From NCBI GenBank assembly GCA_013265495.1, contig MU063499.1, positions 1,116,001 to 1,180,000 of the forward strand: DNA of 64,000 bases, written 5' to 3'. Positions 26,252 to 54,400 of this stretch are shown here, piece after piece. Every line of letters begins with the position of its first letter. Position 1 is the stretch's first letter. A model generated the notes under the pieces. That model was not told where the DNA came from. It did no database searches and saw only the letters and a list, made by a program, of their open reading frames with translations. This DNA comes from Vicugna vicugna. Taxonomy: Eukaryota. Position numbers and translations under genes: made by a program.

Positions 26252-29302
<3,051 letters not shown>

Positions 29303-29679
29303 TGCCAGGCTCTGAGCTGGGGGCAGGTTGGGGTCTGGCTCAGCTGTACTACTCCCCACTTCTCTTCGCACACAGAGGTTGCCTTTGGGAGACCCCAACC
29401 TGATTCAGACCAGGCCAGGGGCAGAGTCTACACCAGGAAGGGCTGGAGGGTGGTCAGGCTCGGATCCTAGCCCTGCTTTTCTGGCCACACCTCCAGACAC
29501 TCAGTTTGGCTGCTCAACTGTGACAGCCCCCGCTTATGAAAAATGTATTAAACTGACATATCAGGGAATCATTTTGCATTATATGTAATCAAAAGAAGAT
29601 TTATCAAATGATCTGTTTAAATTTCAGTTGTTTCCCAGATGAAAGGGACTCTAACTACTGACCCATCAGAGAGTCATCT

Positions 29680-38300: not shown

Positions 38301-39513
38301 GCTCGCGTAGGCACATAGACGCTGTAGCTAGTCCCTAGAGCCATGGGTCCCCTTCCTGCCTGACACAGGCCTCAGGATTGTGGAGGCTGACTCAGGGTGT
38401 GACAGCAGGACATAGGAAGAGGGTGGACCATGCCCAAGGGTGGACAGGCGCTGGGGTGACCCTATATCATTGGCTATTTCTAGGGCAGCCCCTCACTCTC
38501 AGATGTGTGTGGGTGTAGCCGGGTCTTTGCCCTTTGTGGCAAGGGCAACCTAAAAACAAGAACCCAGGGTTGGGACAGGGGTATGGCTTGTCCCTCAGCT
38601 CCCAGCCAGAGGGGCACAGGCCAGGTAGGGTTTCAGTGTTTTGGCTTCAACCTGCAGCTGCCCTCCAGGCAGGAAGTAGCAACACCAGCTGAATGCCTTC
38701 TCTCAGCTCTTCCAGGCCAGGGACTGGGCTGACACAGAGCTTTATTACTCACTGTACTCTTTAGAGCCAGACAAGTTCAGGGGCCATGATTTCTAGCCAC
38801 CTGCATGGCCAGAAGGAGGGCGGGAGGTCCTTCAGCACAGGGTGGAGTTGAGGACAGGAGCAGGGGCAGTTGGCATTGGCACTGGCATTGCCCCATAGTC
38901 TCTATGAGGGTCTCCTGAGGAGGCCTGCACCCCAGCCTCCTTGTGGGCAGGGGCTGCATGGGTTGGGAGGCTGAAGAGGAGAAGGGAGCCCAAAGTGAAC
39001 AGTTCCAGCTCCCAATGGAGCTAGATAGAGACAAGATTAGGTGTGAGCCTCCATACCTAGAGACTACAAAGCAGGCCAGAGCCTCCTCCCCCAGCTCAGG
39101 TTGTACCTCCCACCCAAGTTCCAGGATTTACCTGCACCACTACCTGGATTTCCTGTCCCAGGACACCAGAAGCCAGCACTCCTATACCTTCAAATTCTGA
39201 CTGGCTGCTAGAGCCCCTGCCAACCCAGCATGGAGCTCCAACCAAGCTTCAGAATTTAGGTGGTAACTGCATTACCAGGCCAGCTCCCCAAGAAGTCCAG
39301 ACTCAGACAGGTATCCTCCCTTGGGGGCAACAAATGCTCCCAGCCATCTGTGGAACCCTTTGGCTGTTGTCAAGTTTCCTGGCCTCAGCCCCTTATAGAG
39401 GGCCCAAGGTGGGGGAAGGCAAGCAGTCTTTTCTTCTGGAGCTAGGGGAGGGGGCTGTTCCCCCCACTTCATGACTCACTCCAGGCTGTGTGGGTTATTA
39501 CATTATGTTTGAA

Positions 39514-39527
39514 ATTGCCATGGCAAC
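39514..39527. promoter_or_regulatory. RFX X-box (13/14 palindrome) 3' of ACTL11
   Basis: ATTGCCATGGCAAC; a second site GTCACC-AG-GGCAAC at 39556-39569. Confidence 0.65.
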
Positions 39528-39849
39528 CAGCTGGCAATCAAGGGTAATTGAGCTTGTCACCAGGGCAACAGGGCAAAACCCACAGCAGCCACTCTCTGTA
39601 GTTGCCCTTGGGGTGCAGTAAAGGTCAGGTTAGACCAGGGCCAGTGCCAGGCAAGGGGCTCTGGGGCTCTGGAAGGGATAGGCTTGCCAAGGCCCCTGGA
39701 ATTCCAGTGTGTGGAAGCAGGGGGTGCCTTGAGAGTGCCAAGCCCTCCATCTCTGACCCCATGCCTGGACTCCTGCCCTTCCCTCCACCACCCTCTGCCT
39801 AAAATGTGCCACAGTGGTCAAAGTAAGCAGAACCAGAACTTTTATGTGC

Positions 39850-42800
39850 TCACAGATGGTACTTGTAGATGGCCCAAGGGCCCTCCTCCTCGTACTCATG
39901 GCGGCTGAGCCACAGGCTCTGGAAGGAGTCTCGGGACACCATGATGGAGCCTCCGAGCCAAGCAGCAACAGCACGGTGCGGAGAGCCCAGTACAGTGGCA
40001 CAAGGGCCCAGTTCCTGTCTCAGGCGTTCAGGAAAGCCATTCAACAGGGTGCTACCACCATCCAGCACCACATTAGCCAGCAGCTGCTCCTGCTGCTTGG
40101 CCTCCAGACGGCTGATACTTAGGAGGGCTAGTTGTGGGAGGCCTGGCTGATTGAAGCCTAGCAGATTGGGCTGGAAGAGGGCCTCGGGGCAGCAGAAGCG
40201 CTCAGAGCCCAGCGTGATGACCTGCTTGTCTGGAAGCACAAAGTCCACCCGGGCCTGGGCCTGGGCACGGGCCATCTCGGCTGTCATGTCCATGGCCACA
40301 TAGCAGCAAGCCTCTTTAATCTGGTTGACCAGCTCTGCCTTGGGCGGTGAGTGGCCACTTGCCAACAACAGCTGAGCCAGGTATTCAGTGAGGTCAGCAC
40401 CAGCCACATCCAGCCGGTAGGTGTCCAGTGGGGCCAGATCCCCGGTGATGATGGGCGCCACATAGGAAGTGCCATGGCCACTGCCCAGCACCAGCCCAGT
40501 GGTGCGCCCATAAGCATAGAGCGCCAGCAGGGCCTGATGCACCGTCTGCATAGCTGGCACATGGAAACGCTCAAAGAGTATTTCAGCTACCTTTTCTCGG
40601 TTGGTGCGCGGTGAGATGGGTGAGTCAGCTACCAGCACCGCCAGCTCCTCGGGCCGCACACCCAGCCTGCAGTAGAACAGGTGCTGCCACAGCACCTCCA
40701 GCGCATCCCAGTCGGAGACCACTCCTCGATTCAGCACTGAGTAAGAGCCCTCTCGTTTCTCAGGCACTGCATACCTGGGCTGGCCCTGAACCGGGTGCTG
40801 GAGCAGCTGTACGCGTGAGGGCACTACACTCAGGACATGGTCTTCTCCAGCCAGTCCACACTTGGTGAAGCCTGTGCCTGTGTCGATCACCACAGCTGCC
40901 ATGTCCTGGTAGGGGCCCAGAGTGTGGCGGCAGAGCACTGGGGACTGCACTGGCAGGGTGTTCATGGTGGGCACCAGCTCATAGCAGGCCCCTCGGAGCA
41001 GACCAAGGTGTGCGACCACTGGTGAGTGTGTAATGTCCTCAGCTGTCAGCTTGAACCGGGGACCTTGGAGCTCAGGGCCCACCATGGCCATGGGCAAGAC
41101 CTTGCAACCAGTGCCAGATGTGGTGAATGGGATCAGGGACAGCTGCGCCTCTTGGGCCCTGGGAGAGCAGCCAGGTTGCCAGGATGAGAGCTGATGTGTG
41201 CTGGAGCTTTGAGTAGCACTGGCACCAACTTTTTCTCTGTTCACAGAGACACAGGTCTCCTCAGGGGGCAGGGGCACCCGAACCACCCCCACGTGGGTAC
41301 GTTGGCCCAAGGGCTCATGTTCCTGGCACAAGGTGGAGGCCTGACCAGGTTCCCTAGTGGCAGGGGGCCCTCGTGAGAGGGTAGGCACAGTGGAGATGGG
41401 AGGCACTTGGGAAAAGGGAGGCTGCAAAGTGAGAGAAAGCTGCCTGCCATTAGGTGTCCCAGGAAGAGGGGGCTGACCAAGAAGGCAAGTCTGCTTGGTG
41501 GAGGGGGCCTGCTCAGCTACGGGTGGCTGTCCCGAAAGGTAGGTCTGCCTGGTGTGGGGACAGTGCTCTGCAGAAGGAGGCTGACTGGTTGAAGGGGGCT
41601 GTCTGGCGAGGGTACACTTCTCGGCTAGTGGGGGCTGACCACCGAGGGGACCCTGCCCAGCATCTTGGACCTGAGGGTGGTCAGGATGAGGAGTAATGAC
41701 CTCTTTCTGACCGTTGCTGCCTACATCCTTCTGGAGCTGGGGTCTGGGCACATCCTGGGTTTTGGCTGGTGGTACATGCTCTGGGCTCTGCTCTGAGTTC
41801 ATCCACTGCAATTTCTTGGCCTGGACCATAGAGGTATTCTGCATCCTGGAGGCATCCAGCATCCAGATGGTGCGACTAGCTTCATTTTTTTCAGCATCAG
41901 GTTTGGACCAGCCAGGACCATGGGCATGGCTAAGTGTCCTCTCTCCAAATTGGAGGGGCATCCCCAGTGGAATGGGCCCAGTGAGCATCCCCATCCTGAT
42001 GGGTGTCTCAGTACCAGGGGAGTCCACTGACTCCAGGTTGACCCTGGCCTCCTTGGGAACCAGGGCCACCTCTCGGTAGCTTCCAGATGAAAGGCTAGAG
42101 GGCACAGGGCTGGACACCATGGGCGTGGTAGACCAGAGGCTGGAGCGATTGCTGTCAGGGGAGAGAATGGGCATGGCTAATGGCCGGGTAGACAGCGTAT
42201 TTTCAGAGGCACGGATGGATGAGTGGCTGGGCATGAGGCCCACCAGCACTGCGCGTGAGCCCATGGGGTCGTGGCACAGTAGCCCCATCCTGGTATTGCC
42301 TGTGGCCATATCAAACACCAGCACACGGTCTTCTACAGCATCCTGGAGCTGACAGGTAGGGGCACTGGAGAGGGGTATCTGCATGGCTTCCCTGGGAGTC
42401 TCTGCCGGGGACTGCTTGTGGTAGTTTACTTGGTGGGCAGACAGGGGCACATTGGAGCAGGTGTTGTCGCAAACATTGAAGGGCTGCTGATCTGGCTGAG
42501 AGCTGCAGATCTCCTGGCTACCCCTCTGGGACTTGGGGGTCCCTGGGGGCCCTGAGCCTGGTTTTGGGCTGCTTGGCCTGGAGGTACAGACCAGGGGCTT
42601 CTCCAGTTGGTTTTCAGGCTTCTTGGGTAACACAAGCCTTCTGGCAACCTCGAGCTCCTGGGCCTGGTCTGGGGACTGATTTGGAGTGGGTGCTGGGGTG
42701 GGAGGCTCATCCTGAGAATGGAAATTCACTTTGTCCTGGCAGGATGTGACCCCTTTGGAAGACTCCGAGTAGATTGACCATTGATTGCCATGATTCCTGG

Positions 42801-43602
42801 GAAAGAGGTCTTGGGACAGGCCCTTGGTGATGGCATTAGTATTAGTCAGGGGGTCGAGGTTGCAGGTGTAAGTTTCAACTGCTACTGATATTGGGGTTGT
42901 ATCCAGAGCTGGAATATTTGCCTGAGTTGAAGCTGGAGGAGCCTGAGTTGGACATGGACACTTGTCCTGGTCCTGATCTTGCACTGGGGCCAGAAGAGGA
43001 ACTTGGGCTGCAGCTGAGCCATCCTCCCCTGGAAGAAAACAGGGTAGCCACCGGCTCTTTCTAATGCCCATTGGGGCTATCTGATCAGGGCTGCAGGGGC
43101 CTCTGCCCCAGCCTACTAGAACTTTAGCTGGAGCCTTGCCCTCCCCCGAAATCTGCACCTGAAGCCGGGAGCAGCAGAGTCCGTGCTGGGCCATGTCACT
43201 GGTACCGTCACTGCGCGTGCACACAGGTAAGGCCAGGGTCCTGTTCTCCATGTTGAGATGTGTTTGGGCTCCCACGACGGGGCTTGGAAACGGGCTAGTG
43301 GAGGAGAGGGTCAGGGCATCCTGGGAGGCCTGCTCACAGCCACATTGGGAGCTAACCTGAGCAGGGTCCTGGAGTTGCTGGTGAGTGGGCTTGAGGGTGT
43401 GGGTCTGGGAGCCTGGGCCATAGGCCCCATCAGTGATGGCCTTGGTGGACAGTGACAAGCCCTGCCTCAAGTATACAGATCCTGAGTTTATCCAGGGTCC
43501 CTGGGACCCTCTAAGGCCACCCCCCAGCTGCTGGCTACCAGCCAAGGGGTGGCCCTGGGGGCCTGATGGATCAGGGTCCCCCACTTTCTTGTTGACTTCC
43601 AT
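39850..43602 (-). CDS. ACTL11: Actin-like protein 11: intronless 1250-aa ORF, 900-aa low-complexity N-terminus plus C-terminal actin-related domain
   Basis: Uninterrupted 3753-nt ORF; ATG in strong Kozak context (ACTATGG) with an in-frame TGA 39 nt upstream. Residues 901-1250 (39850-40902) align to actin: VVIDTGTGFTKCG, GVVSDWD, NREKVAEILFE, YAYGRTTG, RLDVAGADLT, ERFCCPEALFQP, GGSTLLNG, WLGGSI. Sits between CAMKV and MST1R, where ACTL11/ACTL11P lies in mouse/human. Confidence 0.92.
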   Translation of the reverse strand: MEVNKKVGDPDPSGPQGHPLAGSQQLGGGLRGSQGPWINSGSVYLRQGLSLSTKAITDGAYGPGSQTHTLKPTHQQLQDPAQVSSQCGCEQASQDALTLSSTSPFPSPVVGAQTHLNMENRTLALPVCTRSDGTSDMAQHGLCCSRLQVQISGEGKAPAKVLVGWGRGPCSPDQIAPMGIRKSRWLPCFLPGEDGSAAAQVPLLAPVQDQDQDKCPCPTQAPPASTQANIPALDTTPISVAVETYTCNLDPLTNTNAITKGLSQDLFPRNHGNQWSIYSESSKGVTSCQDKVNFHSQDEPPTPAPTPNQSPDQAQELEVARRLVLPKKPENQLEKPLVCTSRPSSPKPGSGPPGTPKSQRGSQEICSSQPDQQPFNVCDNTCSNVPLSAHQVNYHKQSPAETPREAMQIPLSSAPTCQLQDAVEDRVLVFDMATGNTRMGLLCHDPMGSRAVLVGLMPSHSSIRASENTLSTRPLAMPILSPDSNRSSLWSTTPMVSSPVPSSLSSGSYREVALVPKEARVNLESVDSPGTETPIRMGMLTGPIPLGMPLQFGERTLSHAHGPGWSKPDAEKNEASRTIWMLDASRMQNTSMVQAKKLQWMNSEQSPEHVPPAKTQDVPRPQLQKDVGSNGQKEVITPHPDHPQVQDAGQGPLGGQPPLAEKCTLARQPPSTSQPPSAEHCPHTRQTYLSGQPPVAEQAPSTKQTCLLGQPPLPGTPNGRQLSLTLQPPFSQVPPISTVPTLSRGPPATREPGQASTLCQEHEPLGQRTHVGVVRVPLPPEETCVSVNREKVGASATQSSSTHQLSSWQPGCSPRAQEAQLSLIPFTTSGTGCKVLPMAMVGPELQGPRFKLTAEDITHSPVVAHLGLLRGACYELVPTMNTLPVQSPVLCRHTLGPYQDMAAVVIDTGTGFTKCGLAGEDHVLSVVPSRVQLLQHPVQGQPRYAVPEKREGSYSVLNRGVVSDWDALEVLWQHLFYCRLGVRPEELAVLVADSPISPRTNREKVAEILFERFHVPAMQTVHQALLALYAYGRTTGLVLGSGHGTSYVAPIITGDLAPLDTYRLDVAGADLTEYLAQLLLASGHSPPKAELVNQIKEACCYVAMDMTAEMARAQAQARVDFVLPDKQVITLGSERFCCPEALFQPNLLGFNQPGLPQLALLSISRLEAKQQEQLLANVVLDGGSTLLNGFPERLRQELGPCATVLGSPHRAVAAWLGGSIMVSRDSFQSLWLSRHEYEEEGPWAIYKYHL

Positions 43603-43640
43603 AGTCCTGCTCCATGCCCTAGGTGCCCTGCCCCCACTTC

Positions 43641-43654
43641 ATTGCCATGGCAAC
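43641..43654. promoter_or_regulatory. RFX X-box in the ACTL11 proximal promoter
   Basis: ATTGCCATGGCAAC, 39 bp upstream of the ACTL11 ATG. Confidence 0.7.
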
Positions 43655-45679
43655 TCCACACATCACAGCCCCCAGTGACCTGGGGGAGGGTGATAGAGTG
43701 TGGGAAACCAGGGGCCCCACCCCCCTGAGGAGTGGGGGCCTGCCCATGGAACCCTGGGGGACAGAAAGGCCAAGGGATGCCAGTGGCCATCCACTGGACT
43801 GGCCAACTCTGGACTGGCCTCCTCTCTCCTTGCCAGCCAGGTGACCACTCGGCCCAGGCCAGCCCTTGCGTGAGGGCAGTGCTCCTGGAGGTGGGAGTGT
43901 GTATAAGGCCAAGGGAGAAAGGTAGGCAGAGGAGATGCTGAGGAAGCCCCTGCATTCCCAGTCTACCTCAGATGCCAGACTTACTCTTTCTGCCCAGTTC
44001 CCAAGTGGCAACTTGAGACTTAAACCCTGACCCAGGGATGCAGTTCCAAGTGTGTGACATGAGGCCCTTTGGGGGTCCAAAGCTCCTTCACCACTCAGTC
44101 CTAAGAGGCAGAAGTGGGTGAGGGGCCCAGGCTCAGGCCCAAACTCCCCTCCCCCATGTTCCCCGGCTCCCACTCCAGGGACAGCAGCTCCTTGGCAGTC
44201 TTTCTGCTCCAGATGGTTCTCCTCTGCCTGTGCCTCCCAGAGCCCCCTCCCCAGAGCCACATGTCCTTGAGGCCCAGGACCAGTATCTCACAGGGGTGGG
44301 GATGGGCACAACTTGGACGGGGGTGGGGCCTCTGCTCAGAATCCTCAAGTCAGAATGTTCTAGCCTTTGTCACATTGTGTCAATTTCACCTTGGCCAGAA
44401 GGAGGCTAGAACACTGGGCATAGGCCTAGGCCACAGTGGACACTGGGCCAGTCAAGTCACAATTACAGGATGGGGCATAGTGGGGATACAGTGGTTACAG
44501 GGCCATTCTCACAGTGGGCAGAGGGCTCGCTACACAATGGGGGTATGGTGGGTGTGGGACTGGACACACAGTGGGCACAGCTGCATACATAGGGAGGACA
44601 AGCTGGACAAAGGAATAAACTTGGAGAGGCATACAGGAAAGGAAGCTGTCAGACCAGGTGGGCAGTTCCACCCTCCATTTCTTAGATGGGCAAACTGTGG
44701 GTCAGGGAGGAGTAGGACCTGCCTGGCCCACCATCCCAGGCCCAGATGTGCCCTGCAGCCACAGAGGACAGGCCTAGTTTGGGGTACCACCTATTTCCAC
44801 AGGCCTGGCTCTGGAGTTCTGCCTGGGGCAGGGTCAGACCCTCCACCCTCCCTCAGCTATGAGCTCTGGGTCTCCTCCCTCTGTTGTCCAGGGCTGGCCT
44901 CTCAGGCCTCAGTCTTTCCACCTAGGAAACAGGTCTGTGGAGAATGCAGCTGTAGGCTTGTCTTCTGAAGCAGTGTGTTTTCACAGGAGTTAAAAATAGT
45001 GCTTACAGTTGGGCTGTGGGGTGTGAAGCGATGTGACCAGGGACCAAGGCTAGCACTGAGCTCTATCTGCACATTCCTGACTCGGGATTGGGCACAGCCT
45101 GACTCAGTCATGTCTCAGGCCCCCCGGGACCCCTCTCCCTTCCCCAGATGCTGCCTTCAGTTCCAAATGAGGACAGATGCCTCTGCTTACCACACACCCA
45201 GGAAGGTGGCAGAACCCCAGGGTCTGTGGCTTGCACGTGTGTGCATACGCACACATACTTGCTGAGCACTGTTAACTTCGTTAATCTCTTGCCTGGAGCA
45301 AACTGTTTTTTTATATTTTGTTTTGTTTTTCCCCACAAGAGAGATACTAGTAGCAGCCTCTGATGCTCTTGCAGCCCTTCAGCTGGGCTGCACCTGGGAG
45401 GGCTGGGGAGGCATGGAGGGAGGACCTGAAAGCTCCTGCCTGTCTGACCACTGAGCCATCCCCAACATCCTGCGGAAATGAGGCGTAATCATCCTTTCCA
45501 GGGCTGGAGTCCTTGTGAACTACTGACCTGAGAAGGGTGTGGCCTGTGAAGGAGGGACCAAAGAAGGCAGTCTGGAGAGAGGAGAAGGCTCTTCCTACCT
45601 GGAAAGCAAACACCCTTGAGAGCAACAAGAAGAGTGACAACTACTGACTGGGTCCTTCCCTGGGCCAGGCAGCGCTGAG

Positions 45680-46352: not shown

Positions 46353-46366
46353 GTTACCATGGAAAC
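46353..46366. promoter_or_regulatory. RFX X-box (perfect GTTNCCATGGNAAC)
   Basis: GTTACCATGGAAAC, 2.75 kb upstream of the ACTL11 ATG. Confidence 0.65.
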
Positions 46367-51409: not shown

Positions 51410-54400
51410 TCACGTGGGCCTTGGTGGCTCTGAGAGGGGCCGGGGCCGCCCTGTGCTCCTGTGCACTGGTGGGGACGGCGACTGTTCCGATGACAGGTTT
51501 GCCTTGTCAGAGGTGCCAGGGCCCACGTTCACATAGGCCACGGGCAGCTGCACGTAGTGGTCTCCTCGCAGTGTGGCCACCATGCGCTCCACTTCCCCTG
51601 CCAGCACTCCAAAGGTGGGTCTTGCTGCAGGATCTGCAGCCCAGCAGTGCTGCATCACTGCATACCTACCAAGTGGAGGAAAACGTCAGAGGCATGGTGC
51701 ACTGCACCCAGAGACTCCGGGCCATCTGCCTGCTGTTACCACCCGGCAGGCCACACAGGGGTGAGGGCAGGTGACAGGACCTGGTGCCTCACATCGCCCA
51801 ATTAGGGGCAGCTCTTCTCCTTCCCAACTTGGCAAGGTTGAATTGCATCAGGGAGCTAAGAGGTTGGGCTCCTGTGCCCTGTGACCTGGGCTATGTGATC
51901 TTGAGCAAGTTCCTTAACTCTGTGCCTCTGGATCCTTCTCTGATCACAGAGGTATTGGGGCATAAGGTGAGAGGATGCCTGTGCAGTTCTTAGCTTAGGG
52001 CCCAACTCACAAGCTATCATGGTTATCATCACATATCTTCCAGGAAGGAAGCCCAGATCTGGGGATTAAAAGGCCTGAGATGTGTGGGGCAGCACATGGC
52101 ACAATGGTTCCCAAGCAAGTGTCTCTGGGTTTGTCGGGTGAGTTCTAATACATCCGCCTTTATCTTGGAAATATTATCCCTGCCTTAAATGATACTAAAA
52201 TTGCCCTACACACAATAATCTCATATACTTTTTAGACCCTCTGAAGGTGGGACTGTTATCATTCCAACTTTCCAGATGAGAAAAACTGAGGCCCAGAGAG
52301 AAGGGACTTGCCCTGAAATAGAGGATGCTGTGGTGTGCCACCCAGATACCCCCCTTTATTCTGCCTGTGGCTGCTGATGGCTCTTGGCTGAGGCCCTGAC
52401 TAGGAATTGCCCTAGGCAGAAAAGAAATGCCTCCTACAAGTTCACACTCCTTCCTCAGGGACAGCTGTGACCAGTGACTGACTAATGTCTGGTGCAAACA
52501 GCTGGGCCCCTTGATCTCAATTTCAGAAAACTCCGAAGGGCCTTTCCAGTGTCAGAGGTTTCCAGGGCATAGGCTGTAGCTTCTGTTGCATCTGCATCAC
52601 AGGCCAACTTCTTCCCCTGCCTAGTCCTGCTTCTCTCACCCCCAGTCTACCAATAAACCCTCTGCACGTAAATCTCCATCTCAGAGTCTGTTTAGGGAGA
52701 CTGCAATATAGGCAAATAGACAGTGAAGTTAATTTCCTTTACTTTGTTTTTTGTTTGGTTTTGTTTTGCAGGGGGAGGGAATTAGGTTTATTTATTTATT
52801 TTAAGTGGACGTACTAGAAATTGAACCCAGGACCTCGTGCATGCTAAACACACACTCTACCACTGAGATATACCCTCCCCCTAATTTCCCTTACTTTGAA
52901 TCAGACGCATTAGTGATGTAAATAATAAAGAGCAAACCCAAGGCAGGCAGGGCAGTGAGGAAGGATTACTCATACCCTTCTGGAACACAGATTGGATAGG
53001 ACTCATCAACCACCTTTACCTGTGTTCTTCCTGTTCTGACCAGAGACTTCAGCACAGCTGAGCCATGTGTGCTGCTTATGAAGCTGAACCTGGGCACCAA
53101 AACCACCCATCAGGCACTGATGAAACACAGCGGCCGTCATACCTCTGGGAACAGGCAATCTAAAACTATACCCAGTGGAAAAAAAAATCTGATCTGCTGA
53201 TGGGGGGGAGGGGCTAGTGTGGGAGCTAATGGAACATTTCCTTGAGGTTAAGAAAGAGGAAAAGATGGAAAACAGCCCCCCTTGGTGGGGGTGGGTGGAG
53301 AGGAGTGCTGGGAAATCAAATCACTGGCCTCAATCCAGACTGAGTTAGGAAATGCTGTTACCATGGCAACTGTGATATTCTTCCAGCACCCAGCCCGGAA
53401 TAGGGGTGGAACCAATCCGCAGATGAGGAAACTGAGGCCCAGAGAGGGTCCCTTTCCAGGTCAGCCAGAGAATCAGTCAAAGAATCAGGCAAGGACTCTG
53501 TCTCCAGCCCCTTTCTTGTCTCTGGGGCCTAGCTCACTCCCCATCACCACTTCCACATACTCACAGAGAATCGGGGCAATACTCAGGCTGGGGCAGGCGG
53601 CGACCCTGGGCCAGGAAGTGAGCGAGGTCAAAAGGGTCAATGTGGGAGTATGGTGGGGCACCCCGTGTCAGCAGCTCCCATAACAGCACACCAAATGACC
53701 ACTGTGGGAGGAGAGAGGTGAAGGGACTGAACTCTTACCCCAAATTTGGAGACAGGTGGGTCCCCCCAGCTCCTCTACCTCTCAGAGCCCTCTAGCTGGA
53801 ATGGAGGGGCTTGACCCCCCAATCAGAGCCCATTCCTCAAAACCTCACCAGCGTCTTCCCTCTGTCCCCACCCACCACTCGAGCCTGCCCAGAGTTGGTG
53901 TTGGGCAGGGCCCAGATTGTCTGGAGTTCATAGCCTTCTCTTGCCCTGACATCTGCCCAGAGGTGGGCAAATGGGCTGGGGGTGCTGCCCAGCTAGGGAA
54001 TTCCCTGGACTCAGATCATCGTCCGGAGCTAATGGGCAAGTCCAGGCTGAGTGTCCTCCCAGGACGCTGAAGCAATGTGGGCCCTGGGGCAGGTGGGGCC
54101 TTACCACATCAGACTTGGTGGTGAATCTGTAAGTCTGTAGGCTCTCGAGAGCCATCCATTTGACAGGTAGACGAGCGTGGCGGTGCTGTTGGACACTGTA
54201 GTATTCCTTGTCCAGGACGTCGCGGGCCAGACCAAAATCAGCCACTTTGACCGTGAATGACTCATCCAGCCTGGAAAGGGAATCACTCTCAGGACTGGCC
54301 CCTACCAGGCCCTGAACCCACCTGTCCCGGCCCGAACAGGGTTTCTGAGCCACAATGTCCAATCCAAGCCTGCACAGGGTAGACAGGAAAACAGACCCAG

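What the first reader, a model, noticed from the sequence alone, without database searches (positions are those of the whole stretch)
39850..43602. Intact giant intronless actin-related gene (ACTL11): 900-aa disordered arm fused to a divergent actin fold
Seen: one stop-free 1250-codon ORF with no introns; only the last 350 aa (39850-40902) are actin-like, and the first 900 aa are P/Q/S/T/G-rich. Established: ACTL7A/7B, ACTL9 and ACTRT1-3 are intronless testis actin-related proteins of the sperm perinuclear theca/acroplaxome; as I recall, the human locus between CAMKV and MST1R is annotated as pseudogene ACTL11P while mouse Actl11 is coding and poorly characterised. Inference: a retroposed actin that recruited a very large N-terminal arm, possibly a condensate-forming sperm-head scaffold kept in this lineage but lost in humans. 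A 3.75-kb open frame is very unlikely to persist without selection.
Basis: partly seen in the sequence, partly recalled or inferred. Interest (0 to 1): 0.78.

Follow-up and report, generated by a model that had tools for sequence, protein, structure and literature searches.

The report
Alpaca ACTL11: giant-armed sperm actin-like gene
This is the intact alpaca copy of ACTL11, an annotated but unstudied sperm gene in which an ancient, probably non-polymerising actin-like core acquired a 900-residue, mostly disordered N-terminal arm during mammalian evolution.

Summary
Window 39850-43602 (minus strand) is one stop-free 1250-codon ORF. Only residues 900-1246 are actin (Pfam E 1.3e-81). The first 899 residues are P/S/Q/T/G-rich.

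It is the Vicugna pacos orthologue of ACTL11, lying between an MST1R-like receptor gene and CAMKV. About 70 placentals keep a collinear protein of about 1200-1250 aa.

Main correction: the core is not a mammalian retrocopy. Arm-less, single-exon orthologues of 370-420 aa occur in sturgeon, coelacanth, amphibians and sauropsids (clade support 100/98), in the same gene slot in Rhea. The arm is a therian addition: about 345-430 aa in marsupials and about 900 aa in placentals. It has no relatives among 1.84 billion proteins.

Constraint is mosaic. Omega is 0.15 for actin and 0.61 for the arm. Residues 426-600 (0.37) and 751-899 (0.43) are constrained, and 601-750 is neutral-like (0.91). Neutral evolution cannot keep the frame open.

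The actin core lacks catalytic D154 and H161 and many filament contacts.

Evidence for expression and translation: boar sperm phosphosites span the arm, mouse Actl11 is RFX2-dependent in testis, a conserved X-box sits 39-52 nt upstream of the ATG, and camelid reproductive-system RNA contigs cover the 5' end.

The gene is known. Its function is untested.

The parts
39850..43602 (-). Complete single-exon ACTL11 coding sequence (1250 codons plus TGA stop); predicted protein 134 kDa, pI 6.2
39853..40905 (-). Actin-fold domain, residues 900-1250. The P1 loop, K18, Q137, K213/E214 and G301/G302 equivalents are kept. D154G, D157H and H161Y replace the P2-loop residues. The D-loop is shortened, and Y169D, K336A, L349R and a changed C-terminus (H-L in place of C-F) are present. 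There are deletions of 6 aa in subdomain 2 and 7 aa at the 319-326 loop.
   Evidence: Pfam; PDB; residue table; AF2 pLDDT above 90 and pTM 0.83; Foldseek TM 0.91 to G-actin; omega 0.15
40906..41352 (-). Arm module, residues 751-899 (pre-actin segment). Constrained, omega 0.43. Partly alignable with marsupials. AF2 does not predict it to dock on the actin domain.
41353..41802 (-). Arm spacer, residues 601-750. It is 20% Pro and 12.7% Gln, rich in indels, and has omega 0.91, which cannot be told apart from neutral. Most of residues 650-740 are absent in marsupials.
41803..42327 (-). Arm module, residues 426-600. This is the most constrained part of the arm (omega 0.37). It holds the island at 426-455 (omega about 0-0.1 in pairwise comparisons; D431, T434, G440 and C443 are invariant, marsupials included) and the Ser-rich run at 497-511. 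The segment is basic (pI 9.4).
42328..43452 (-). Arm residues 51-425. Weakly constrained (omega 0.78). It contains the conserved motif PAKVLVGWG at residues 158-166. Residues 1 to about 355 have no marsupial counterpart.
43453..43602 (-). N-terminus, residues 1-50. The start Met is conserved in 69 of 71 placentals. Kozak context has A at -3 and G at +4. An in-frame stop lies 12 codons upstream.
43641..43654 (.). Near-perfect palindromic RFX X-box, 39-52 nt upstream of the ATG, conserved in all nine placentals aligned
   Evidence: mouse Actl11 is down in Rfx2-/- testis
43603..43745 (-). Conserved proximal promoter / 5' leader block, about 140 nt. The transcription start site is not mapped.
26255..29314 (-). 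Downstream neighbour: CAMKV exons (context only)
   Evidence: tblastn of the Bos model P0101
53931..63892 (-). Upstream neighbour: exons of a Sema-domain receptor tyrosine kinase, consistent with MST1R (context only)
   Evidence: Pfam on ORFs; same gene order in Rhea

Best explanation
The stretch is the functional alpaca (Vicugna pacos) orthologue of ACTL11. It is a single-exon gene expressed in the male germ line, and it encodes a 134-kDa sperm protein built from two parts of very different age.

The C-terminal actin-fold core descends from an ancient bony-vertebrate actin-related gene. That gene already sat between MST1R and CAMKV and was already single-exon.

In the therian ancestor the core evolved rapidly. 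It lost many residues that conventional actin uses for filament contacts, on top of a family-wide loss of the catalytic P2-loop residues. At the same time it acquired a long N-terminal arm, which grew to about 900 residues in placentals.

Inferred mechanism: the core is a non-polymerising module with little or no ATPase activity, though it may still bind nucleotide. It docks onto actin, Arp or actin-binding partners. The arm is a largely disordered, multiply phosphorylated scaffold. Two constrained modules (426-600 and 751-899) and a few short motifs provide binding sites. The spacers between them are selected only to stay open and roughly the right length. Transcription in spermatids is probably driven through the conserved promoter-proximal RFX X-box.
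For: Shown:
- Intact ORF and domain content.
- Orthology to ACTL11, with about 70 collinear full-length placental proteins; the closest is Camelus at 97%. Genome identity comes from exact matches to V. pacos proteins.
- Synteny.
- The CDS is single-exon in camel, cattle, horse, dog, lemur, mouse, whale, Antechinus, Rhea and alligator.
- Therian ACTL11 nests inside a clade of arm-less vertebrate proteins (support 100/98), the branching order follows the species tree, and the therian stem is long (0.75).
- ML omega is 0.15 for actin and 0.61 for the arm (P against omega = 1 is 1e-26), with mosaic constraint along the arm.
- No neutral replicate (0 of 2000) keeps the arm open at d = 0.1. There are 43 in-frame indel blocks in the arm and none in actin.
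- The arm has no relatives outside ACTL11 among 1.84 billion representatives.
- Residue table for the active site and filament contacts.
- Boar sperm phosphosites from Ser85 to Ser822 (PMC8322956) map onto alpaca residues in the arm.
- Mouse Actl11 has BaseMean 4590 in P30 testis and is 4.4-fold down in Rfx2-/- (PMC4498915 S1 and S2 tables).
- Conserved X-box.
- Contigs of ten RNA runs from three studies, two labelled 'reproductive system', hold about 0.6 of the ORF's words and 0.56-0.59 of its 5'-most 1.2 kb.
Against:
- The coded run labels do not say male or female.
- An intronless gene cannot be told apart from DNA contamination by splicing. Run sizes of 178-847 M letters make genomic contigs unlikely, but that is an inference.
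- Localisation in sperm (head or tail) is unknown. CilDB lists the mouse gene.
- RFX2 regulation may be indirect. Mouse Actl11 was not a ChIP target at P21, and Rfx2-/- spermatids arrest early.
- Loss of ATPase activity and of polymerisation is inferred from residues and was not measured.
- AF2 gave no usable model of the arm (pLDDT 29), so disorder is inferred from composition and indel tolerance.
Confidence: 0.8

Rival explanations
1. Only a short, roughly 350-aa actin-like protein is made, starting at Met901. The upstream 2.7 kb would then be an untranslated leader that happens to be open.
For: Met901 sits right at the start of the actin domain and is present in 60 of 71 placentals. The non-mammalian orthologues are short.
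Against: - Boar sperm phosphopeptides map to residues 85-822.
- The arm has omega 0.61, significantly below 1 (P = 1e-26), with modules at 0.37 and 0.43.
- All 43 indel blocks are in frame, and neutral drift would close the frame.
- Met1 is conserved in 69 of 71 placentals and has a good Kozak context.
- Met901 is replaced in 10 placentals and absent in marsupials.

A minor short isoform cannot be excluded.
Confidence: 0.04
2. ACTL11 is a mammalian retrocopy of a conventional actin that later captured an arm.
For: The CDS is intronless. The closest solved structures are conventional actins at about 40% identity.
Against: Arm-less orthologues in sturgeon, coelacanth, amphibians, turtles, squamates, alligator and birds form one clade with therian ACTL11 (100/98), outside the actin + ACTRT clade (100/99). 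In Rhea the gene sits in the same MST1R-like / CAMKV-like / RING slot, and it is single-exon there and in alligator. A much older retroposition at the base of bony vertebrates is not excluded.
Confidence: 0.05
3. The arm began as a tandem duplicate of the actin module that fused in frame and then degenerated. The leads were that marsupial ACTL11 (777 aa) is about twice the 390 aa of non-mammal proteins, and that the island at 426-445 resembles the actin P1 hairpin.
For: There are 8 identities in 19 positions between the island and the P1 loop. hhalign gave P = 0.015-0.05. The failed AF2 model put strands at 426-454, at low confidence.
Against: hhalign probability is only 1-3%. The Smith-Waterman score of the alpaca arm against its own actin domain is ordinary among 1000 shuffles (p = 0.74). 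The marsupial arm gives p = 0.15-0.18, and its best alignment falls elsewhere. No second collinear match was found.
Confidence: 0.07
4. The alpaca copy is a decaying relic on its way to pseudogenisation, as in anthropoid primates.
For: Parts of the arm evolve almost neutrally (omega 0.78-0.91). In the close alpaca-camel pair, residues 51-425 give dN/dS 1.47 and 601-750 give 1.02, on few changes.
Against: The frame is intact with no stops. For alpaca against camel, the actin domain gives dN/dS 0.13 and the island 0.32. The promoter block and X-box are conserved. RNA contigs from camelid reproductive samples cover the gene.
Confidence: 0.03

Closest known systems
ACTL11 / Actl11 of other placentals (horse, dog, mouse, pig; human ACTL11P)
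   Same: Orthologue. Same length (about 1200-1250 aa), collinear arm, about 90% identical actin domain, same position between MST1R and CAMKV, single-exon CDS.
   Different: Nothing structural. The alpaca protein is 97% identical to Camelus. The human copy is named a pseudogene, and the anthropoid models seen here are truncated.
Arm-less ACTL11-like proteins of non-mammalian vertebrates (annotated 'actin-3-like', 'actin-1-like', 'actin, acrosomal process isoform-like')
   Same: Same clade (100/98), same syntenic slot in Rhea, single exon. They share the VIDTGTG.TK P1 motif and the family-wide replacements D154G/E, D157H/Y and H161Y.
   Different: They have only 25-60 residues before the actin domain. 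They keep H73, Y169, L349 and the C-terminal C-F, and they lack the two therian deletions.
ACTL7A / ACTL7B (testis Arps of the subacrosomal perinuclear theca)
   Same: Intronless, testis-enriched actin-related proteins with a disordered N-terminal extension ahead of an actin fold. They are the closest intronless paralogues in the alpaca genome (45% and 43% identity). They share H at position 157, and ACTL7A also shares Y at 161. ACTL7A, ACTL7B and ACTL9 form a testis Arp complex with ACTRT2 and ACTRT3 (PMC13752377).
   Different: They form a separate clade. Their extensions are about 55-70 aa, not about 900 (PMC10925299). ACTL11 is not named among the members of that complex in the paper's abstract, and the full-text search for 'Actl11' did not return the paper.
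Conventional actin (ACTB, ACTG1, ACTBL2)
   Same: Same fold (TM 0.91, about 40% identity). P1 loop, K18, Q137, K213/E214 and G301/G302 are conserved.
   Different: Catalytic D154 and H161, D157, methyl-His73, the D-loop methionines, Y169, the 322-325 loop, D286/D288 and C374-F375 are all changed or deleted. A 900-aa arm is added.

Membership tests
Actin / actin-related protein superfamily (Pfam PF00022) | Significant match to the Actin profile over the whole domain | tested here: met
   E 1.3e-81, 274.8 bits against a cutoff of 27; profile positions 3-406 of 410
Actin / actin-related protein superfamily (Pfam PF00022) | Four-subdomain actin fold | tested here: met
   AF2 model pTM 0.83, domain pLDDT above 90; Foldseek TM 0.91 to G-actin structures
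ACTL11 orthologue group | Groups with named ACTL11 proteins to the exclusion of other actins and Arps | tested here: met
   Therian ACTL11 clade 100/100; named 'actin like 11' in horse, dog and rodents
ACTL11 orthologue group | Conserved position between MST1R and CAMKV on the same strand | tested here: met
   CAMKV exons at 26255-29314; Sema + tyrosine-kinase exons at 53.9-63.9 kb; same order in Rhea. The MST1R name rests on domains and synteny, not on a named match.
ACTL11 orthologue group | Long collinear N-terminal arm of about 850-900 aa | tested here: met
   70 placental proteins align collinearly with low gap fractions
Conventional polymerising, ATP-hydrolysing actin | Catalytic and phosphate-2 residues D154, D157, H161 together with Q137 | tested here: not met
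   G1040, H1043 and Y1047 are respectively invariant, near-invariant and invariant in 71 placentals; Q137 is kept
Conventional polymerising, ATP-hydrolysing actin | Filament contacts: D-loop with M44/M47, Y169, 322-325 loop, D286/D288, C-terminal C374-F375 | tested here: not met
   D-loop 4 aa shorter and without these Met residues; Y169D; 7-aa deletion at 319-326; D286E and D288K; C-terminus H-L. Polymerisation itself was not assayed.
Testis Arp complex of the subacrosomal perinuclear theca (ACTL7A/7B/9, ACTRT2/3) | Testis or spermatid expression and presence in sperm | tested here: inconclusive
   Shown for orthologues only: boar sperm phosphoproteome and mouse P30 testis. Camelid RNA contigs come from runs labelled 'reproductive system'. 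Nothing at read level for alpaca.
Testis Arp complex of the subacrosomal perinuclear theca (ACTL7A/7B/9, ACTRT2/3) | Physical association with the other Arps or CAPZA3, and perinuclear theca localisation | not testable with these tools
   ACTL11 is not named among the complex members in the abstract of PMC13752377. No localisation data were found in the five papers that mention the gene.
Mammalian processed retrogene | Intron-containing parent gene and absence of the copy from the syntenic site in outgroups | tested here: not met
   A single-exon orthologue is present at the same site in Rhea and is single-exon in alligator. The clade reaches sturgeon.

The most novel reading that the evidence does not exclude
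The ACTL11 arm is a protein region born and enlarged in therians. It was added in at least two steps (about 345-430 aa before the marsupial-placental split, then about 355 N-terminal residues plus a P/Q block in placentals) onto an actin-related core more than 400 million years old, which at the same time gave up filament contacts. Under this reading the arm is a phospho-regulated scaffold specific to mammalian sperm architecture. Its repeated decay in anthropoid primates would mark a lineage-specific rewiring of that architecture.
Probability: 0.3. Interest if true: 0.6.

Novelty: already known. Interest (0 to 1): 0.4.

Why it matters
ACTL11 is annotated across mammals, but I found no functional study. 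It appears only in gene lists in the five papers that mention it. Its relatives ACTL7A, ACTL7B, ACTL9 and ACTRT1-3 are now established fertility genes.

This analysis gives a concrete framework for studying it:
- It separates an ancient core from a mammalian arm.
- It identifies which 325 or so arm residues are under real constraint and which are spacer.
- It predicts a core that neither hydrolyses ATP nor polymerises.
- It ties expression to an RFX X-box.
- It suggests the gene is dispensable in anthropoid primates.

It is also a clean natural example of how a very long disordered region can be grafted onto an old fold and kept open by selection while most of its sequence drifts. For the scan itself, this is a correctly recognised, already annotated gene and not a new kind of element.

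Tried and rejected
1. Arm as a degenerate second actin domain. hhalign gave P = 0.015-0.05 but probability of only 1-3%. Shuffle controls gave p = 0.74, 0.18, 0.09 and 0.15. Rejected as unsupported.

2. AF2 of residues 401-1250 with 69 close orthologues. Mean pLDDT was 29, even in the actin domain. The model is uninformative and I drew no conclusions from it.

3. ESM Atlas feature search with arm residues 401-620: no usable hit.

4. Docking of the conserved pre-actin segment 841-895 onto the actin domain: not predicted, pLDDT 26-55.

5. Tracing placental residues 1-420 in the 3 kb upstream of the Antechinus gene by tblastn: nothing below E = 1.

6. Laying RNA reads on 39000-44900. One X-box-like match that one search reported there is given by coordinates only.

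7. PolyA signal: no AATAAA or ATTAAA in 39551-39849, so the 3' end is not mapped.

8. Tandem repeats at DNA level in the ORF: only three trivial short arrays. The P/Q block is not a recent tandem array.

10. Complex prediction: not used. I make no specific claim that two named proteins bind.


Full report
**Observation.** The window holds one ORF at 39850..43602 on the minus strand, with an ATG start, 1250 codons and a TGA stop. The other five frames of the same span carry 32-49 stops each. From base composition alone the chance of 1250 open codons is about 1e-17. Pfam finds a single domain, Actin (PF00022), at residues 900-1246 with E 1.3e-81. The best solved relatives by sequence are cytoplasmic actins (E 4e-86). 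Residues 1-899 are 12.5% Pro, 10.6% Ser, 8.5% Gln, 7.3% Thr and 7.6% Gly.

**Identity and context.** A search with the full protein returned 103 relatives, about 70 of them full-length (1150-1300 aa) placental proteins. The closest is Camelus at 97% identity over 1250 aa. Sources name the horse, dog, Nannospalax, Jaculus and Phodopus proteins 'actin like 11'. Exact-sequence look-ups of paralogues from the window's own genome hit Vicugna pacos entries for ACTL7A, ACTL7B, ACTRT1-like, ACTBL2 and ACTL10, so the genome is alpaca. CAMKV exons lie downstream on the same strand at 26255-29314. Upstream, at 53.9-63.9 kb on the same strand, are Sema-domain and tyrosine-kinase exons that fit MST1R. A preprint cites human ACTL11P together with MST1R at chr3:49.88 Mb. 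The coding sequence is a single exon in camel, cattle, horse, dog, lemur, Mus caroli and Antechinus. The gray-whale locus is open for all 1250 codons even though its gene model has an intron.

**Age of the two parts.** Searching with the actin domain alone found proteins of 370-420 aa in turtles, squamates, alligator, frogs, salamanders, a caecilian, coelacanth, sturgeon and some birds. They match at 43-53% identity (E 1e-92 to 1e-111), clearly better than conventional actins (about 40%, E about 1e-80). In a maximum-likelihood tree of 50 sequences they form one clade with therian ACTL11 (support 100/98). The branching order follows the species tree: sturgeon, coelacanth, amphibians, then sauropsids plus therians. 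Conventional actins with ACTRT form a separate clade (100/99), and so do ACTL7A/7B. In Rhea the 370-aa gene is single-exon. It sits between a Sema/PSI/TIG/tyrosine-kinase receptor gene and a Ser/Thr-kinase gene followed by a RING gene, all on one strand, which is the same order as in the window. The alligator gene is single-exon too. So the actin core is an old bony-vertebrate gene that was intronless long before mammals.

Non-mammalian proteins have only 25-60 residues ahead of the actin domain. Marsupial proteins (776-777 aa) have an arm of about 345-430 residues, depending on where the actin domain is taken to begin. That arm aligns only with placental residues from about 356 to 899 and lacks most of 650-740. 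In Antechinus an in-frame stop lies one codon upstream of the ATG, and nothing in the 3 kb upstream resembles placental residues 1-420. An exhaustive HMMER search of 1.84 billion representative proteins with the arm found 24 matches. They are ACTL11 orthologues, short fragments that align collinearly at high identity, and one weak hit (E = 2e-4) to the P/Q-rich stretch. None points to another family. The arm is therefore a therian novelty that grew in at least two steps.

**Selection.** Across 70 placental orthologues, mean identity to alpaca is 0.90 in the actin domain and 0.61 in the arm. The arm has islands at 426-450 (0.91), 501-525 (0.84), 851-875 (0.78) and 1-50 (0.73). Codon models on nine species give the following omega values:

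| Segment | omega | P against omega = 1 |
|---|---|---|
| actin domain | 0.15 | 1e-96 |
| whole arm | 0.61 | 1e-26 |
| 1-50 | 0.54 | 0.008 |
| 51-425 | 0.78 | 5e-4 |
| 426-600 | 0.37 | 6e-20 |
| 601-750 | 0.91 | 0.42 |
| 751-899 | 0.43 | 1e-13 |

The island at 426-450 has pairwise dN/dS near 0-0.1, and four of its residues are invariant even in marsupials. In simulations, neutral substitution closes the arm's frame in all 2000 replicates at d = 0.1. Among the nine species there are 43 distinct indel blocks in the arm, all in frame, and none in the actin domain. Most of the arm's sequence is free to drift, but its openness and two modules are under selection.

**The actin core.** A model of residues 841-1250 built on a diverse alignment is confident for the actin domain (pLDDT above 90, pTM 0.83). 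It superposes on G-actin structures with TM 0.91 at about 40% identity. Mapping onto actin numbering shows that D11, G13, G15, K18, Q137, K213, E214, G301 and G302 are kept. D154 is Gly, D157 is His and H161 is Tyr. The D154 and H161 changes are shared by the whole ACTL11 clade. Therians additionally have H73R, Y169D/E, K336A and C374-F375 replaced by H/Q-L, and placentals have L349R. All ACTL11 proteins have a D-loop four residues shorter and without M44/M47. Therians alone have a 6-residue deletion in subdomain 2 and a 7-residue deletion at the 319-326 loop. From what is established about actin catalysis and filament contacts, I infer a core that may bind nucleotide, hydrolyses poorly if at all, and cannot make canonical F-actin contacts. 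This was not measured.

**Expression and translation.**

- *Boar sperm.* A boar sperm phosphoproteome lists ACTL11 among the most multiply phosphorylated sperm proteins, with sites from Ser85 to Ser822 (PMC8322956). An orthologue of 1250 aa (P0002) carries Ser at 10 of the 11 listed positions, so the numbering transfers. Nine sites are Ser or Thr in alpaca (S85, S93, S152, S171, S263, T402, S481, S528, S822), and four are S/T-P. This shows the arm is translated in an artiodactyl.
- *Start codons.* Met1 is conserved in 69 of 71 placentals. Met901 is conserved in 60 of 71 and is absent in marsupials.
- *Mouse testis.* Mouse Actl11 has BaseMean 4590 in P30 testis. It is 4.4-fold down in Rfx2-/- testis at P30 but not at P21. 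It has an RFX2-like developmental profile, was not a ChIP target at P21, and is flagged 'high stringency in CilDB' (PMC4498915 tables S1 and S2).
- *Promoter.* The 140 nt before the ATG are conserved from alpaca to mouse and elephant and contain a near-perfect palindromic X-box at 43641-43654.
- *Camelid RNA.* Contigs of ten RNA runs from three studies, two labelled 'reproductive system', hold 0.25-0.61 of the ORF's sampled words, and eight of them hold 0.58-0.61. Nine of these runs hold 0.38-0.59 of the words of the 5'-most 1.2 kb. A uniform share near 0.6 for 31-mers fits about 1.6% divergence, which suggests a close camelid relative and not partial coverage. Runs of 178-847 M letters are too small to assemble single-copy genomic DNA. 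Both of these points are inferences.

**Primates.** Lemur proteins are full-length with 93% identity to alpaca in the actin domain. The Gorilla model starts at the equivalent of residue 280 and ends inside the actin domain. The Saguinus model has changes at positions invariant across actins. The Pygathrix and Plecturocebus models end before the actin domain. This suggests decay across anthropoids and not in humans alone, but it rests on gene models.

**Rejected ideas.** The island at 426-445 resembles the actin P1 hairpin, and marsupial ACTL11 is about twice the length of the non-mammalian proteins. Profile comparison gave only 1-3% probability, and shuffle controls gave p = 0.74. The duplication hypothesis is unsupported. 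The first structure job was uninformative.

**Verdict.** This is a real, intact gene under selection and a correctly named orthologue of an annotated but functionally unstudied gene. It is ordinary as a genomic feature and moderately interesting biologically. This analysis adds the ancient arm-less ancestry, the stepwise therian arm, the map of constrained and neutral arm segments, the predicted loss of catalysis and polymerisation, and the conserved X-box.

Noticed in passing
window 43641-43654, 46353-46366, 53357-53370, and one more inside 39471-39550: There are four near-consensus RFX X-boxes in the window against 0.36 expected from shuffles (0 of 100 shuffles reach 4). One is the ACTL11 promoter site. 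The others lie in the ACTL11-MST1R interval, in MST1R, and just downstream of ACTL11.
   Followed up: partly
window 43603-43660: Two ATGs lie inside or just after the conserved X-box, in frames other than the main ORF. If transcription starts upstream of them, the mRNA would carry short upstream ORFs. The TSS is not mapped.
   Followed up: no
L014, L015, L017, L026 (alpaca genome, small contigs): At least four intronless actin-like ORFs (310-414 aa, about 40% identical to the ACTL11 core) share an unusual N-terminal extension of about 30 residues ahead of an actin with a beta-actin-like C-terminus. They look like a small family of expanded retrocopies. One of them carries a stop.
   Followed up: no
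L002:1501-5253: The gray-whale gene model (1227 aa) has an intron, but the locus is open for all 1250 codons in one frame. The intron looks like an annotation artefact.
   Followed up: yes
P0101 (Bos) against window 26255-29314 and 39901-40737: A UniRef Bos entry fuses the ACTL11 actin domain with CAMKV in one 788-aa protein. It is either a read-through transcript or a mis-joined model.
   Followed up: no
L008 (Elephas) and P0039: The elephant model starts in an upstream exon with an unrelated N-terminus, yet the DNA holds an intact 1263-codon ORF beginning with the usual MEATKKVGG start.
   Followed up: partly
window 41353-41802 (residues 601-750) and orthologues P0007, P0008, P0019: The P/Q-rich block gives weak or faint Pfam hits to PF10511 (Cementoin, the transglutaminase-substrate repeat of trappins) in some orthologues. 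This is probably compositional.
   Followed up: no
window 39551-39849: There is no canonical polyadenylation signal in the 299 nt after the stop codon, so the 3' UTR must extend further, into or beyond the places I could not examine.
   Followed up: partly
   Followed up: no
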